The translations under genes were made by a program, and so were the position numbers. Of a DNA stretch of 64,000 nt, positions 6,601-13,734 are shown piece by piece. A model generated the notes under the pieces. That model saw nothing but the letters and a program-made list of their open reading frames with translations. It searched no databases and was not told where the DNA came from. How positions within the stretch are numbered: position 1 is the stretch's first letter; every line of letters starts with the position of its first letter. This DNA comes from Adineta vaga (taxonomy: Eukaryota > Animalia > Rotifera), in assembly GCA_021613535.1 (NCBI GenBank), contig CP075495.1, positions 4,030,001 through 4,094,000 of the forward strand, read 5' to 3'.

Positions 6601-7492
6601 GTTGTTTGAGAACTTCTAATAATTAATTTGGATATAAAAGAAAAGCAAATCTTTTCAATAATATATGTAAGAAAGACGTAGGTGGGAAGAAAAATGAGTC
6701 AATAACGAAAACAATATGAGTGAACAATCATTGAGACGAGAAGCTCTTTCACTCATGAGATGAGTCATATCAAATTCAAGTAATTAACCAATAAAATATT
6801 TGAATATTGAACGACTATGACATGATCGTATTTGAATAGAAATCAAAAGTGTTTCCTAGAAAGCAATCGGAAAAATGTATATATTCAATTATGATCGCTA
6901 GATGGCGCTAAATACTCAGCGCGATTATTGATAGTTATAATATTTGTTAAGAACCGAGAATCTTCTGTAACATGATTATCCTATGCTGTTCTATCATCAA
7001 CTGATGTATGGTATCAAGATGAAGAAGTGACTTATCAATTATTTTATTGATCTAATCTATTTCAATATTTCGCATGATTATAATATGAAAAAAATGGTCA
7101 ATACAACGTATAACGTACACTTTGTCAACTTACTAAGGTGAAATATTACGTCGAGTTCATTAGATAGTAGAACACAGATTATATATACATGAACTATTAT
7201 CAACGAACTGATGTTTATGAAATAACAAGTACCATATTTGGATATTTTTAAATGTAGAATAAGATGTTTAAAAGAGAAGTCAATTTATGGACATATATGA
7301 AATTTTTATCGAATTCTTTATTAAATAAGAGCACCGTCTTGTATGTAAGTACATAAAAACAAAACTCAACCTAATCGTGATTTATTCTTTTTGCTTTTTG
7401 TTTTGTAAAAAACAACTCCAATTGATATGTCTCTACCTATGATAATAAAAAGAAAAATATGAATAGAGCACCGATAATAGACATTTCAGAAA

Positions 7493-10400
7493 TCATTTAT
7501 GTTCAATAGTTGCTGGTCGTAATGGAAGTTGAAAATGATGTACACGTGTTGGTTCTTGTATAAATTTTTGCCATGCGACCTTTTCTGCTTTTGTTGAATC
7601 TGACCAAGTCACTGGCTTATTATCAAAATGTCCTTGTGCAAGATTAAGACGGACAAAACCAAACATAAATTTTCGAAAACGTTCTTGAATCCAAATACTT
7701 ATTTCTATGGATGTATTTTTCAAATTATCACGGCGTATTCCTTCCCATCTTAAAGGTATTTCCCATTTTGGTGTTGGTCCTTTTCGTAGATTCGGTATTT
7801 TACGCTTAACTTTATCAGGCATCAATACACTATATCAAATTGCCGTATTATTTAAATATCAAGAAGCATAAGAGACATCTTACCCTTTACAAACAGCATC
7901 AACTTGATGTTTACCAAAGAAAATTGATTTAGCCTGAACATTATGTACTTGTATAGTTCCAATATCTTTATTCTTTGCATTTTCAATAAATGTCAATTGA
8001 AAGATAATTTCTGCTGGATCCATCGTTGGTTCAATATTTGGTGCTAACTAAAGTTTCAAAGATGTTCTTTCGAAAAAGAATATTTCAATGAAGTAAACTT
8101 ACATCATTTTTCTTTTTTTGTGCCATTAATGGATATTCTTGAACTGTATCTAATGTACAATTAGCTAATGGAATATGTATTTCACCAAGAAAATCATTAT
8201 GTCCTAATGATGCTAGACTCCATACTGATATCCATAAAACTCGCGTTTCAAATTCTTGTTTAGTTACGTGATACTAAATATCAACGAGATATGAAAAAGA
8301 TTCATTTTCTAATAAAGAAAAACAAAAACTTACACGAAATTTTTCATCAAAAACAGGATCGATGGTATTTTTCTTTAAACCAGATTTTCTTTTACTATTC
8401 TTCGATCGATCAGGTAATAGATAAACTTTAACGAATCTAAAATAATAAGTCTATCAATGATTATTTCTTTTCAATTTACAATCGAATTCTTACGGATCAG
8501 ATGTTTGACTCTTTTTTGCTTTTGCTAAATTTTTGCAACTATTTATGTAAACATCGAATGCACCTGTTACTAATGCATATGTTAATTTCAATTCAATTGT
8601 ACCAGTTACATCAAGACCATAATGAGCTTTTGTTTCACTTGCAACACTATTTAAACTTAATTGTGAACCCTAAAGAATCCATAGTCATTATAATATTTGT
8701 AAGAAAAGATATCAAATCGAATCGTTTGTTTAGTATTTCAATACAAAGCATTAGAAAATATCATTCAATCAAGCTTGATTTTCAAACTTACACGCATATC
8801 CATGCAGGAAGAGGCACGCATTTGTAATTTCTATTATTATAAAAATCCTCACCACTTTAGGTTTATTATCAGTTATAGTTAGAAAGTATTCCTGAACAAG
8901 TTAATTTTTTTGTTTTATTCATTCAAAAAACGGAATCAATCCTTGTTTGTTTTGTGTTCACTTACCAATTTAGCTTCTTCAAATGTTTTATCAATATCAT
9001 CATCATCATCACTATCAGCAGCTTCAAGATGTCCAACACTACCAAAGTTTTCTGATCTTATTTGTTTTAAAGTGGAATTTGTTGATACAAGTGTATTCGT
9101 GGATTCTTTATGATGATTATTTGAAAGAGGTTGTAAATCATCTTTTATGGTCGATTCTAAATCAATAAAAAAGTTTCAAAAATATATATACAAATCAAAA
9201 GAAACTTGAAATATTTATTCGATAGAAGTAAGAAATGATTAAAAACATAATGACTATGGGATTCTTTTCATCGTGTTTGATAGCGTTTTTTATCCGATGA
9301 TCGATGTACAGTACGTTTCTTCGGAGGATTCGTTACTATTGTTGTTATTGTTGTTGATATTGGTGACATATCCGATTCATCATCCTTACTGGATGATGTC
9401 AAACGCAATTTCATGAGAATATATTTCGTTTTCGATAATTTTACAGGTGGAGTGTCAGTATGTTTTGTTGTTATACTTGCTGCACTAGGCATTTTCATTA
9501 ATGATGTTTTTGATAAAGATGCTTGTTGTTTATCTTGATCAACAATACCGTCACTCCATCGTCGACCTAAGGGCTCTTTATCATCAGTTTCTTCACGATC
9601 TTTATTCTGTACATCGCTATTTAATTGATGTGATCGTTTGGATGCTTCAATACGTTCAAGTTCTTTGGAGAGAATATTTACATTAACATGATTATCTTCA
9701 TCTTCTTCTTCTTCACCAATACTATGTAAACGATGTTTCTCAAGAATTGATGATGGAGATATTAAAATGTCGGACAATGAAGAAAGATCCATTGAATTAT
9801 TCGAAATTGCTGAATTGAAATCCGTATCAATTGTTTGATCGTGTGAGTCATGTCTTTCTGATAAATCATGATCAACATCGAACGTATGTGAATATCCATG
9901 TGGATCAGTAATAAAGATTGTGGGTAGAAAATTGAAACAGGATGGCGCCGATTTATTCAATTGATGATCTTTAATATGAGACATTTTCTTTCGTATTAAT
10001 AAACTTTCATGATCACTTTCATCACTAAATTGTTCGTCGTCAAGTGAACTAGCTGAGGAATGACTATAAGAATGTGCCATGCTTGAAAAATTCGGATGAT
10101 CATCACTCGTTGCTGTTTGACGTTCGAGAGTATATTTTCGTTTAGGATGATGTAATTCATCGAAAGGAAGAGTTGAATAAGTATGTTGTTGATGATGAGA
10201 CATTTTTTTGGGTGCAATAAAAATAGGTGCTGATTTTACGGGCTTCTTTATTGTTGTTCCTCCAAGTCTATTTTTATTATTTGGCGTAAGTAAATTCACT
10301 TTTGAAGAATCAGTTTTTATATTTGCTCTACGACGACTATAAGAAGCCGGGATTGGTGTCGTTCGTTTTTTCATTGCTATCGATGATTTATCTGATTCGT

Positions 10401-12845
10401 TATAGCTGGATTGTTGTAATTCATCTTTATTACTAGGCTTATCAGTTGAATTTGATACATGACAAGTCGTATTGTTATTTGATGAAGTTTGATCATCAAA
10501 TATTGAAGCAACATATGTATTAGACGTTTGTAAATGTCCTTGTTGAGCTACTTGAGTGATACGCGTATTTTTACATATTTCATTATCATGTTCATTATGA
10601 TTATTTAAAGATTGATTTATAAATAACGGATTTCTCGATGATGGATTTAGAGCTGACATTTCTACGGGTAATTGATTAGGAATGTGTTGTTGTTGTTGTT
10701 GTTGATGTTCCCGTTCATGGAATTCATTCATGATTGAAACGTATATCGTTGTTATTCATTGATAGATAAAAATATACTGACACAGTTGACGTAACGCACT
10801 AGTTTTTTTCCTTTTTCTTATATAAAAATAATATTGTATATTTCACGTGTAATTTTTTACAATACAAAAATGTAATTGTCGTTAACTTAACGATATTCGT
10901 TCAAGTGTGACCGATTAGTCACATAAAAAACATTATATAGAATCTAATGTGTCGATATTTCTTTTTGGTCGACTAGTAGTACGTATTGCATACGTCAGAG
11001 CAAAAAGAAAAAGGTTTTATTTCGTATTTGATGGCGTCCATTATATTTCGGCACAGTAAGCTATTTTTTACCTGTAATAGGCAATGATGAATAGTATGGA
11101 CGCCGTTTATCCATCTGTGTAAGTATTCGCATAAAAAGGCGATTTTATTTATAGGTATTGAAAGAAAAATAAACGAAAAAAAACGTATTCCGACGCCGGG
11201 AATCGAACCCGGGCCTCCTGCGTGAAAGGCAGAAATCCTAACCACTAGACCACGTCGGATATATATGTATGCTGTCTGACTTACCTCGCATTTTCATCGA
11301 TGTGGTATCTGCTGATTCCGGTTTTGTACTGTTTAATGATGTTCGTGACGCTGATATATGTCGTTTTGAATGAACAGCATCTCGTAAACTTTGAATCGAA
11401 CCACCTAAATGCACTCGTGATGCTAGACTTTTTTTCGATCCACCTAATCAATTGATACGTAAATTAAAAGCAATAGAAGATGTTGTCTAAGTTGAACTTA
11501 CGTTTTTTTGTGGCATTCGACTCTCGAATAACTGATTCGCCTCTTTCAGATTCACCACCCCATTCTGATGATGTAACTGATGCACAATCAATACTAACTT
11601 TATTTCGGTCATTATAATAATCTCGTTCAGTTTGCATTGTTGACGATGAATCAAGACGTTTGGTCTCTACTGGATCTCTTTGTGATGATTTGTCATTATC
11701 ATTATTATTATTATTTATTTGACCACTAGATGTTGACATACGAGTTGTTTGATTGGGTGAATGATCAAATACGGAATCAACATCATCTGACGATCCTCCA
11801 GTTAATATATTAGAATTGGTTTTAGTTAAAACACGAGATTCTTGATGTGTTGACCTTCTCGATGCAGGTTTCTTCAGGGAATTTAATTTTTCTTCATCCA
11901 TCAATGATTGAACAATCATACGATTACCATTATTAGATGAGATTGGTTGACTAAATCGAGTTTGTAATAATCTTGGACCTCTATTCTCCGATGAATTGAC
12001 TGTACTTTCAGTTTCTGTGTCTGAACTTGATATTTGATTAAGATCTATTTCAGAAAACGACAAGAGAAAGAATAAAATTATTCGAGTACATTAAACTATC
12101 ATTGTTACCTTGCATGGAAACGGAAGGTGTGAGTGATTTGCGTATAATTTCAGATGCAGTTATAGAATCTTTACGAAGATTACTTCGAAAAGAATAGATC
12201 CATTCACCTGAATAACTCATTAATTGCCTAAAATAGAATTCATTTTAGACTTCATATTATGAATTTCTCTAAAATTATTATTCACATATCCGACGTGGTC
12301 TAGTGGTTAGGATTTCTGCCTTTCACGCAGGAGGCCCGGGTTCGATTCCCGGCGTCGGAATATTCTTTTTATTTTTCATGAACTTACATCTGTTTACAAC
12401 ATAACTGACACAACCATCCATTATCATTAACATTATACATAAGTCGACATTGTTTGCAAACTTTTGCACCACATTTTGGACAGGCATCACCTGTATTAAA
12501 TATAAAACCAAATGCTGTTTGACATCGGGCACATACAGATGTTGATGTTGTTTGCGGTTTTTGTTCAAGATCAGCAACTTCTTTCCTTAATTGCCTATTA
12601 TATACAAAATTGATTTCATTGATAAAACTCATATTATCCTATTTATATACATACATAAAACGTGCTAAGTGTTTATTTCGTAGATTTTCATCTCGTAATA
12701 AAACATTTAATATATGTCGTTTTTCCTCTTCTTTTAAACCAGAAAGATCAGGTAAATTGACAAAATTATCACTAGTCGAACTAAAATCTGTTCTCGTTGA
12801 ACGTGTTGGTGAAGAAGTATTTTTCGAGTTATAATTTCGTGTCAT
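7493..12845 (-). CDS. Synaptotagmin-like Rab27-effector (Slp/SYTL family): Rab-binding SHD with Zn finger plus tandem C2A/C2B
   Basis: DLSGLKEEEKRHILNVLLRDE (SHD1), CARC..CPKC..VCKQC..WLCQLC, SGEWIY (SHD2), C2A FVKVYLLPDRSKNSKRK..KKNTIDPVFDE, C2B DAVCK..LMPDK..KRK. Confidence 0.85.
9268..10731 (-). CDS. 487-aa intronless, low-complexity ORF nested in the largest Slp intron
   Basis: 1464-nt ORF with its own ATG (in-frame TGA just upstream), its own stop and an AATAAA ~50 nt downstream. Rich in S/H/D/N/Q. Confidence 0.6.
   Translation of the reverse strand: MNEFHEREHQQQQQQHIPNQLPVEMSALNPSSRNPLFINQSLNNHNEHDNEICKNTRITQVAQQGHLQTSNTYVASIFDDQTSSNNNTTCHVSNSTDKPSNKDELQQSSYNESDKSSIAMKKRTTPIPASYSRRRANIKTDSSKVNLLTPNNKNRLGGTTIKKPVKSAPIFIAPKKMSHHQQHTYSTLPFDELHHPKRKYTLERQTATSDDHPNFSSMAHSYSHSSASSLDDEQFSDESDHESLLIRKKMSHIKDHQLNKSAPSCFNFLPTIFITDPHGYSHTFDVDHDLSERHDSHDQTIDTDFNSAISNNSMDLSSLSDILISPSSILEKHRLHSIGEEEEDEDNHVNVNILSKELERIEASKRSHQLNSDVQNKDREETDDKEPLGRRWSDGIVDQDKQQASLSKTSLMKMPSAASITTKHTDTPPVKLSKTKYILMKLRLTSSSKDDESDMSPISTTITTIVTNPPKKRTVHRSSDKKRYQTR
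11188..11259 (-). tRNA. tRNA-Glu (TTC), intronic
   Basis: 72-nt cloverleaf TCCGACGTGGTCTAGTGGTTAGGATTTCTGCC-T-TTC-ACGCAGGAGGCCCGGGTTCGATTCCCGGCGTCGGAA, with a T-run terminator downstream. Confidence 0.97.
12289..12360 (+). tRNA. tRNA-Glu (TTC), intronic, antisense to host gene
   Basis: Identical to the copy at 11188-11259, followed by TTTTT. Confidence 0.97.
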
Positions 12846-13734
12846 CTTATAAACATTCTAATCAAGTCTAAAAGAAATAGAAAAAAAGAAATTAACTTAG
12901 ATCAATATGTAGTTGAATTCTGAAACCATCTTTTATATAAAAACAAAGGAAAACAAATCTAGTTAGCAAATACACTAGTAAATCTATCTGTCAACAAAAT
13001 AGCTTAAAGGTAACTATCACACGTGTATGAACGCATGTTAATAAATAAGAAAAAAAAGGCATCAATATATATATATATATATACAACGACGGTTTTTGTT
13101 AAAGAGAATCTAAAGAAAACTATTTGTATTAGATAATTAATGTAAAAGGTTTTTTTCCTCTTCTCTTTTTCTTGAAAATAAAACTGAAAACTTGCTGCAT
13201 ATATGCTAATAAATGATGATGACATGTATATATAACAAATATACATTATCCTGTAAGCTATTATCGTACAGCAATGAGAAAGGAGCGAGCGAGGGAACGA
13301 GAGAGAGCCAGAGAAAAAGCGGTAAAAAGAAAAAAAAAATTTTTATACGTTTTGGGATGTATGCCTATGTGTGTTCTTCCCGTATTTTTTCTTTAGATGA
13401 AAGAAATATGAGCGTGCTTTCATCCAGAAACTTGTTGTTACACATTTGACTTGCTTGTATATTCTCATATTTTCCCCTTCGTTCTGTCTACTTTAAAATT
13501 ATTACATGAAAAAGTTTTTATATAAATTAACATTCACTTAGCATATGTTTCTTTCAAATTTCCTTAGAAATCTTTCAGCATATCTTCTAACTATATATAT
13601 CCGAAAAATAAAATAAAGAACGAAATATTGAATCAAAATAATCAGATTTTATTTGTATGCATCAATATTACTCTAAATAATAAGTAATGAAACATAGACA
13701 TGACCAACTTACTGATTTCTACGTCGTTTTTCTT

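What the first reader, a model, noticed from the sequence alone, without database searches (positions are those of the whole stretch)
11186..12362. Identical inverted tRNA-Glu pair brackets three Slp exons: tRNAs positioned like circRNA-promoting inverted repeats
Seen: two 100%-identical tRNA-Glu genes on opposite strands (~78-bp perfect inverted repeat with flanks). One sits in a 160-nt intron (12228-12387), 61 nt before the acceptor at 12227. The other starts 25 nt after the donor at 11285. They enclose exons 12109-12227, 11502-12044 and 11285-11443 (821 nt). Known: flanking intronic reverse-complementary sequences such as Alu pairs promote back-splicing and exon skipping. Inference: in the pre-mRNA the sense and antisense tRNA could pair and yield an 821-nt circRNA or a frameshifting skip. 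Alternatively, RNase P/Z cleavage of the sense copy could separate the Rab-binding half from the C2 half.
Basis: partly seen in the sequence, partly recalled or inferred. Interest (0 to 1): 0.8.

Follow-up and report, generated by a model that had tools for sequence, protein, structure and literature searches.

The report
Ancient tRNA pair inside rotifer gene
Two identical, oppositely oriented tRNA genes have sat in two introns of a rotifer vesicle-trafficking gene since before the bdelloid genome doubled, but other tRNA genes in these animals stay in place just as often and the available RNA data show only normal splicing, so the proposed circular-RNA role is possible but unsupported.

Summary
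Observation confirmed: two 72/72-identical tRNA-Glu(TTC) genes (11188-11259 minus, 12289-12360 plus; exact inverted repeat 77 nt) lie in introns 2 and 5 of a bdelloid (Adineta vaga-like) synaptotagmin-like gene. RNA contigs confirm the exon model. Identity is uninformative: all ten genomic copies are identical. The arrangement is ancient: 12 of 13 orthologous or ohnologous loci (Adineta, Rotaria, metagenomes) keep both copies, in both duplication lineages; only the A. vaga C5 ohnolog lost the antisense copy. A control intergenic tRNA-Thr is retained at the same rate (9/10, Fisher p=1). Every copy keeps a Pol III T-run terminator, inner flanks are not complementary, and spacing to splice sites drifts (7-25 and 28-62 nt). 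Contigs from three studies show only canonical splicing, with no back-splice or skip; this is weak evidence of absence. Best reading: ordinary Pol III tRNA genes nested in a host gene, a known class, conserved by positional inertia. A by-product circle is plausible (about 0.3); a selected circRNA or skip function is unlikely (about 0.08). Side find: a conserved, transcribed 487-aa intronless ORF with its own upstream element inside intron 5. No earlier scan note covered this locus.

The parts
12289..12360 (+). tRNA-Glu(TTC) gene, antisense to the host gene, in intron 2; T5 terminator 5 nt after its 3' end
   Evidence: present in 12/13 bdelloid loci, absent without remnant from the A. vaga C5 ohnolog
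11188..11259 (-). tRNA-Glu(TTC) gene, sense to the host gene, 25 nt into intron 5; T8 terminator 4 nt after its 3' end
   Evidence: present in all 13 loci
12654..12845 (-). First coding exon of the Slp-like gene (N-terminal helix of the Rab-binding domain)
   Evidence: weak FYVE_2 hit; splice joint 12593/12654
12388..12593 (-). Exon 2, FYVE-type zinc finger of the Rab-binding domain
   Evidence: Pfam FYVE_2 E=2.5e-10; nearest solved structures melanophilin and Slp4
12228..12387 (-). Intron 2 (160 nt) holding the antisense tRNA gene; 49 nt in the C5 ohnolog that lacks it
   Evidence: spliced in 3 studies
12109..12227 (-). Exon 3 (119 nt); encodes the SGEW motif, invariant in 13 loci
11502..12044 (-). 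Exon 4 (543 nt), Ser/Thr-rich linker
11285..11443 (-). Exon 5 (159 nt); its donor lies 25 nt before the sense tRNA (7 nt in six other loci, 24-25 nt in the rest)
9157..11284 (-). Intron 5 (2128 nt) holding the sense tRNA, a conserved non-coding element and a nested ORF
   Evidence: joint 9156/11285 in 3 studies
10897..10921 (-). Conserved 25-nt non-coding element (TGAC-N6-GTCA core), 162-262 nt before the nested ORF's ATG in all 13 loci; probable internal promoter element
   Evidence: best match 17-25 of 25 in each locus; function inferred
9268..10731 (-). Nested, same-strand, intronless 487-aa ORF; 435-554 aa in all 13 loci with a conserved C-terminal RYQT motif; transcribed unspliced from about 10810-10833
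   Evidence: no Pfam hit, no Atlas hit at 0.9 or above
7493..9156 (-). 3' exons of the host gene encoding two C2 domains
   Evidence: Pfam C2 hits, splice joints

Best explanation
Both copies are ordinary, independently transcribed RNA polymerase III tRNA-Glu(UUC) genes nested divergently (5' ends 1029 nt apart) in introns 2 and 5 of a synaptotagmin-like (Slp) Rab-effector gene. They are identical because the mature tRNA sequence is under purifying selection across the whole family (family-wide identity shown; cause inferred). The pair probably arose by an old local inverted duplication (inferred) before the bdelloid whole-genome duplication (supported by the tree). It has stayed put because bdelloid tRNA loci rarely move or disappear (shown with controls). 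The host pre-mRNA is spliced canonically around both genes (shown). Any pairing between the two copies in the pre-mRNA is a side effect, not the reason they are kept (inferred). Pol III occupancy itself was not tested.
For: All 10 genomic copies and all copies in other bdelloids are 72/72 identical. All 25 copies in 13 loci keep a run of 5 or more T within 4-11 nt of the tRNA 3' end on their own strand; pre-mRNA pairing would not need this. Exact complementarity extends only 0-5 nt on the inner side. Spacing to splice sites drifts: 7 or 24-25 nt to the donor, 28-62 nt to the acceptor. The A. vaga C5 ohnolog lost the antisense copy cleanly and keeps its reading frames. Cross-species control: an intergenic tRNA-Thr(TGT) from a multi-copy family is kept in place and orientation in 9 of 10 distinct loci (7 of 8 outside A. 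vaga), against 12 of 13 here, Fisher p=1. All three tRNA-Glu loci have syntenic ohnologs. Seven C3/C6 and four C2/C5 same-anticodon loci are perfectly collinear. Other inverted same-anticodon pairs exist: Arg-TCG with 84-88 nt at 100%, and Phe-GAA. Only canonical joints in RNA contigs. In C. elegans 44% of tRNA genes are intronic, in both orientations, and 32-52% of tRNA-host pairs are conserved across Caenorhabditis (PMC4999229).
Against: The control is one intergenic locus with about ten lineages, so the test has little power to detect a modest excess. The collinear ohnolog pairs were picked because both members were found. An inverted pair that brackets exons inside one pre-mRNA was seen at no other cluster I examined. 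The duplex is thermodynamically dominant in the full pre-mRNA. RNA contigs cannot exclude rare circles.
Confidence: 0.72

Rival explanations
1. The two copies are kept, at least partly, because they pair in the pre-mRNA and drive a functional 821-nt circRNA of exons 3-5 or an NMD-coupled skip. A weaker version, a low-level by-product circle without selected function, is compatible with the best explanation and I put it near 0.3.
For: All 72 pairs form in the minimum-energy fold of the 1271-nt segment (-384.8 against -240.8 kcal/mol for local folds only). The 61-nt and 25-nt spacings are close to minimal constructs of 87 nt (40 repeat) and 59 nt (36 repeat) that circularise in human cells (PMC4201285). 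The pair is present in 12/13 loci and both ohnolog lineages.
Against: No back-splice or skip joint in contigs of three studies that cover the place (weak). Retention equals the control. One ohnolog lost a partner. In six loci the sense copy starts 7 nt after the donor, and in two (L026, L036) the duplex would extend over intron positions +3 to +7, which should hinder rather than help use of that donor (inference). Each copy can fold locally (-24 to -29 kcal/mol), and a 160-nt intron is probably removed quickly (inference). Hairpin stability does not predict circularisation (PMC4201285). Invariant tRNA sequence leaves no covariation to test.
Confidence: 0.08
2. The tRNA genes act at the DNA level on the host: Pol III or TFIIIB/C complexes slow Pol II (the antisense copy meets it head-on), or the sense copy insulates or opens the internal promoter of the nested ORF; conversely the host promoter may tune the tRNA genes.
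For: Precedents: an antisense Pol III unit in Polr3e intron 1 lowers host expression about 1.5-fold by interference (PMC5358760); host promoters restrict intronic tRNAs in C. elegans (PMC4999229). The sense copy is kept in 13/13 loci, upstream of a conserved element and a transcribed nested ORF.
Against: No occupancy or expression data here. The distance from the tRNA to the conserved element varies from 266 to 675 nt, while the distance from element to ATG is steadier. Retention does not exceed the control.
Confidence: 0.15
3. The sense cloverleaf works inside the pre-mRNA: RNase P/Z cut it out and separate the Rab-binding half from the C2 half (possibly releasing the nested-ORF message), or it acts as an intronic splicing element like the human nimtRNAs.
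For: The sense copy lies only 7-25 nt from the donor in all loci. nimtRNA cloverleaves enhance splicing (PMC7722341). C2 exons show higher contig depth than the 5' exons.
Against: One contig path joins exons 2-5 to exon 6 at constant depth, so full-length mRNA is made. The nested transcript begins about 350 nt past the tRNA, behind its own conserved element, with a coverage gap between. Its depth roughly accounts for the C2 excess (contig depth is a poor measure). Intronic nimtRNAs were not processed out of pre-mRNA (PMC7722341). No leader-like loose end was seen at the nested transcript's 5' end.
Confidence: 0.05

Closest known systems
Intronic tRNA genes conserved with their host genes in Caenorhabditis (Sagi et al. 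2016, PMC4999229)
   Same: Intact, identical-sequence tRNA genes inside introns, in either orientation, with the same anticodon in the same host gene across species.
   Different: Here two copies of one anticodon are inverted around three exons and the pairing is older than a whole-genome duplication; host-promoter control was not tested.
Inverted intronic repeats (Alu pairs) that promote back-splicing (Liang and Wilusz 2014, PMC4201285)
   Same: Complementary sequences in the two introns flanking an exon block, close to the splice sites, long enough to pair.
   Different: The repeats are Pol III tRNA genes with their own folds and terminators; no circle was detected; pairing dependence is untested.
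Antisense Pol III MIR in Polr3e intron 1 (Yeganeh et al. 2017, PMC5358760)
   Same: A conserved antisense Pol III unit near the 5' end of a Pol II gene.
   Different: A true tRNA gene rather than a SINE; a second sense copy is present; no interference data.
nimtRNAs, intronic tRNA look-alikes that enhance splicing (Hoser et al. 2020, PMC7722341)
   Same: A tRNA cloverleaf in a pre-mRNA intron near a splice site.
   Different: These are nuclear cytosolic tRNA genes with Pol III terminators and no divergence, not mitochondrial look-alikes.
Synaptotagmin-like proteins (Slp4/granuphilin; Drosophila Bitesize from own knowledge)
   Same: Host gene has a FYVE_2 Rab-binding domain with an SGEW motif and two C2 domains.
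   Different: Orthology to one vertebrate Slp was not resolved; the bdelloid gene carries a nested intronless ORF with only rotifer-like homologs.

Membership tests
Nuclear Pol III tRNA gene | Canonical cloverleaf with anticodon, above the Rfam cut-off | tested here: met
   RF00005 65.9 bits, full length, both copies
Nuclear Pol III tRNA gene | Oligo-T terminator just downstream on the gene's own strand | tested here: met
   T5 or longer within 4-11 nt in all 25 copies
Nuclear Pol III tRNA gene | Pol III/TFIIIC occupancy and precursor transcripts | not testable with these tools
   Only assembled contigs were available; identical mature sequences cannot be assigned to a locus
Conserved intronic tRNA-host gene pair | Gene lies inside a spliced intron of a Pol II gene | tested here: met
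   Joints 12226/12387 and 9156/11285 in three studies
Conserved intronic tRNA-host gene pair | Same anticodon in the same host gene across species | tested here: met
   12/13 and 13/13 loci
circRNA-promoting inverted intronic repeats | Reverse-complementary sequences of 30-40 nt or more in both flanking introns | tested here: met
   77-nt exact inverted repeat; duplex -160.9 kcal/mol
circRNA-promoting inverted intronic repeats | A back-splice junction exists in RNA | tested here: inconclusive
   None in contigs of three covering studies; contigs drop rare forms and library type is not on record
circRNA-promoting inverted intronic repeats | Circle depends on pairing (mutation and compensatory rescue, or covariation) | not testable with these tools
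   Needs a minigene; the tRNA is invariant so the alignment holds no covariation
circRNA-promoting inverted intronic repeats | Co-retention of both arms above background (my proxy for selection on pairing) | tested here: not met
   12/13 against a control of 9/10, Fisher p=1; low power
circRNA-promoting inverted intronic repeats | A-to-I editing in the paired arms | tested here: inconclusive
   No listed difference falls in either tRNA copy, but the spliced contigs skip both
tRNA-punctuated transcript cut by RNase P/Z | RNA ends at the tRNA borders | tested here: inconclusive
   Contigs cannot show ends; the nested transcript's contigs begin about 350 nt past the tRNA
Synaptotagmin-like protein (host gene) | N-terminal Slp homology domain plus tandem C-terminal C2 domains in one transcript | tested here: met
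   Pfam FYVE_2 and C2 hits exon by exon, PDB melanophilin/Slp4, joints linking all exons

The most novel reading that the evidence does not exclude
Two working tRNA genes double as the complementary arms of an ancient RNA switch: since before the bdelloid genome duplication they have paired in the Slp pre-mRNA to make a regulated circRNA of exons 3-5 or a non-productive skip. This would be tRNA genes serving as circRNA-promoting repeats, which I did not find described in one targeted paper search.
Probability: 0.08. Interest if true: 0.75.

Novelty: new member of a known kind. Interest (0 to 1): 0.3.

Why it matters
As read here it is a well-documented case of a known thing: intronic tRNA genes kept with their host gene, with a matched control showing that bdelloid tRNA loci are simply stable. 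Its practical value is as a natural experiment. One ohnolog has both copies and the other has one, in the same cell, so a single RNase R RNA-seq run would show whether inverted tRNA genes can drive back-splicing. If they do, tRNA genes would join transposon repeats as a source of circRNA arms. The nested ORF in intron 5 is an unexplained conserved gene-in-gene and may deserve its own follow-up.

Tried and rejected
(1) Recent local duplication or gene conversion as the cause of identity: rejected; flanks of the two copies match at 15/40 and 13/30 positions, like unrelated copies, and the whole family is identical. (2) Assembly artefact: rejected; the same pair occurs in independent assemblies of other species. 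(3) Conservation as proof of pairing: not supported once the tRNA-Thr control was run. (4) Local flank synteny for nine guessed ohnologous tRNA pairs: only 2 showed flanking homology within 2.5 kb; chromosome-scale collinearity supported most of the others, but these pairs were chosen by score and are not an unbiased rate. (5) The FYVE-exon DNA tree was unresolved; only the nested-ORF tree placed the ohnologs. (6) Nested ORF as a cassette exon or trans-spliced cistron: no joint into it, no leader-like loose end and no conserved acceptor before the ATG. (7) Pfam and Atlas gave nothing for the nested ORF; the costly representative-protein search was not run because the verdict does not rest on it. 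(8) The intron-length output was wrong (the pattern matched inside the tRNA) and was replaced.

Full report
VERDICT. The circRNA reading remains possible and is unsupported. Interest 0.3.

WHAT IS THERE. The window holds exactly two tRNA genes, both Glu(TTC): 11188-11259 on the minus strand and 12289-12360 on the plus strand. They are identical over 72 nt, and the exact inverted match is 77 nt. The host gene runs on the minus strand. Its exons hit Pfam FYVE_2 and C2, and the zinc-finger exon's nearest solved structures are melanophilin and Slp4, so it is a synaptotagmin-like Rab effector. The genome is 100.8 Mb in six contigs. Named homologs come from Adineta and Rotaria, so I take it for the bdelloid rotifer Adineta vaga (inference).

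THE EXON MODEL HOLDS. Logan contigs of four studies were laid on 7400-13300; three cover the 5' half. No joint goes back from 11285 to 12227 and none skips from 12388 to 9156. This is weak evidence of absence: contigs drop rare forms, the library type is not on record, and no raw reads were offered. A-to-I editing could not be judged because the spliced contigs skip both tRNA copies.

IDENTITY SAYS NOTHING. All ten Glu-TTC copies found in the genome are 100% identical, as are all copies in other bdelloids. The flanks of the two Slp copies are no more alike than those of unrelated copies. Other clusters also hold inverted same-anticodon pairs 0.6-3 kb apart: Arg-TCG on C4, with 84-88 nt at 100%, and Phe-GAA on C2. 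The Arg cluster appears intergenic; I saw no second case of a pair bracketing exons.

THE PAIR IS ANCIENT. I fetched related loci through the ORF nested in intron 5, so they were not selected for having tRNAs. A. ricciae, Rotaria socialis, R. magnacalcarata and eight distinct metagenome loci (five from one assembly; bdelloid by similarity) all carry both genes in the same introns and orientations. The only exception among 13 fully covered loci is the A. vaga ohnolog on C5. It has the sense copy, but its intron 2 is 49 nt with no remnant of the other. In the ORF tree that ohnolog groups at 100/99 support with four loci that keep both copies. The pair is therefore older than the genome duplication, which is placed in a common bdelloid ancestor (PMC6264785), and C5 lost one copy later (inference; the tree is rooted at the midpoint only).

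BUT THAT CONSERVATION IS THE LOCAL NORM. As a control I took an intergenic tRNA-Thr(TGT), from a family with at least seven copies, lying between a DGAT-like gene and a neuropeptide-like gene. It was fetched by the neighbouring exon. It is in place and in the same orientation in 9 of 10 distinct loci, 7 of 8 outside A. vaga. Against 12 of 13 this gives Fisher p=1. The test is small and the control is a single locus. Within the genome, all three tRNA-Glu loci have syntenic ohnologs with copy numbers 2/1, 5/2 and 1/1, and eleven same-anticodon pairs are perfectly collinear between ohnologous chromosomes (chosen because both members were found). In nematodes 44% of tRNA genes are intronic, in both orientations, and 32-52% of tRNA-host pairs are conserved between species (PMC4999229).

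BOTH COPIES LOOK LIKE WORKING POL III GENES. All 25 copies keep a run of five or more T within 4-11 nt of the 3' end on their own strand. Complementarity between the copies reaches only 0-5 nt into the inner flanks; on the outer side it reaches 11-15 nt in three loci, through the shared terminator. Spacing to the splice sites is loose: 28-62 nt to the acceptor, and either 7 or 24-25 nt from the donor. In two loci the duplex would cover intron positions +3 to +7 of the donor, which should hinder its use (inference).

If both arms are in one molecule the duplex wins: -160.9 kcal/mol against -28.7 and -24.2 for the local folds, and all 72 pairs form in the fold of the 1271-nt segment. Mini-introns of 87 and 59 nt with 36-40 nt repeats circularise exons in human cells, even with the repeat next to the donor (PMC4201285), although the same paper finds stability a poor predictor. 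I put a low-level by-product circle near 0.3 and a selected function near 0.08. A skip would delete the exon with the invariant SGEW motif and stop within six codons, so it could only be non-productive. DNA-level interplay between Pol III and Pol II, as at Polr3e (PMC5358760), is a somewhat likelier add-on (0.15) but is untested. RNase P/Z cleavage has no support: full-length mRNA is made, and intronic tRNA look-alikes were not processed from pre-mRNA in the one study read (PMC7722341).

MECHANISM COMMITTED TO (0.72). Pol III transcribes the two genes divergently from internal promoters and stops at the T-runs (inferred from anatomy). Pol II transcribes the host across both, and the spliceosome removes introns 2 and 5 canonically (shown). 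Selection on tRNA function keeps the arms identical, and low turnover of tRNA loci keeps them in place (identity and low turnover shown; cause inferred).

SIDE FINDING. Intron 5 contains a same-strand, intronless ORF of 487 aa (10731-9268). It is present in all 13 loci at 435-554 aa with a conserved C-terminus, has no Pfam or convincing Atlas match, and its 47 database hits are rotifer where named. A 25-nt element (10897-10921) is conserved 162-262 nt before its ATG in all loci. Unspliced contigs cover it from about 10810-10833 and run on into the exon at 9156. Its depth added to that of the 5' exons roughly gives the depth of the C2 exons (a rough measure). An internal promoter is the simplest reading. 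How a message with a stop upstream of many junctions is used is unexplained.

NOVELTY. New member of a known kind (conserved intronic tRNA genes). One paper search for tRNA genes as back-splicing repeats returned only reviews. The scan's earlier notes held nothing on this locus.

Noticed in passing
window 9268-10731 (-): Nested same-strand intronless 487-aa ORF in Slp intron 5, conserved in all 13 bdelloid loci, transcribed unspliced and apparently reading on into the C2 exons. Low-complexity protein with short conserved motifs; no Pfam or Atlas match. A public record calls the A. vaga relative 'PKD channel', which nothing here supports.
   Followed up: partly
window 10897-10921 (-): Conserved non-coding element with a TGAC-N6-GTCA core upstream of the nested ORF in all 13 loci. 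It contains GGTCACACT, which resembles Drosophila promoter motif 1 (resemblance from memory, not tested; one match in the window, 0.11 expected by chance).
   Followed up: partly
window 11260-11303 (-) and L016, L022-L036: The exon 5 donor lies either 7 nt or 24-25 nt before the sense tRNA. A. vaga C2 and Rotaria align without gaps here, which suggests the donor slid by 18 nt in frame while the tRNA stayed put.
   Followed up: partly
window 8791-8890 (-): Minor alternative exon inside the 296-nt intron 8669-8964, seen in contigs of one study only.
   Followed up: no
L038:2743-5519 (G000 C4 about 877-880 kb): Four tRNA-Arg(TCG) genes, two per strand; the outer two share a 158-nt inverted repeat at 96% including flanks, suggesting recent inverted duplication or conversion.
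   Followed up: no
L039:2299-7289 (G000 C2 about 15.68 Mb): Three tRNA-Phe(GAA) genes in alternating orientation with 166-289 nt of flank similarity at 83-85%.
   Followed up: no
L061, about 1250 nt upstream of the DGAT-like exon: A 28-nt decayed remnant marks a lost tRNA-Thr(TGT); L062-L064 instead carry a tandem duplicate.
   Followed up: no
L044:2824-3186: Neuropeptide-precursor-like ORF with repeated PYRFGKR units beside the control tRNA-Thr, conserved across bdelloid loci.
   Followed up: no
L019 (G000 C3 about 5.66 Mb): A distant third FYVE_2-like gene (35% identity) with no tRNA within about 5 kb.
   Followed up: no
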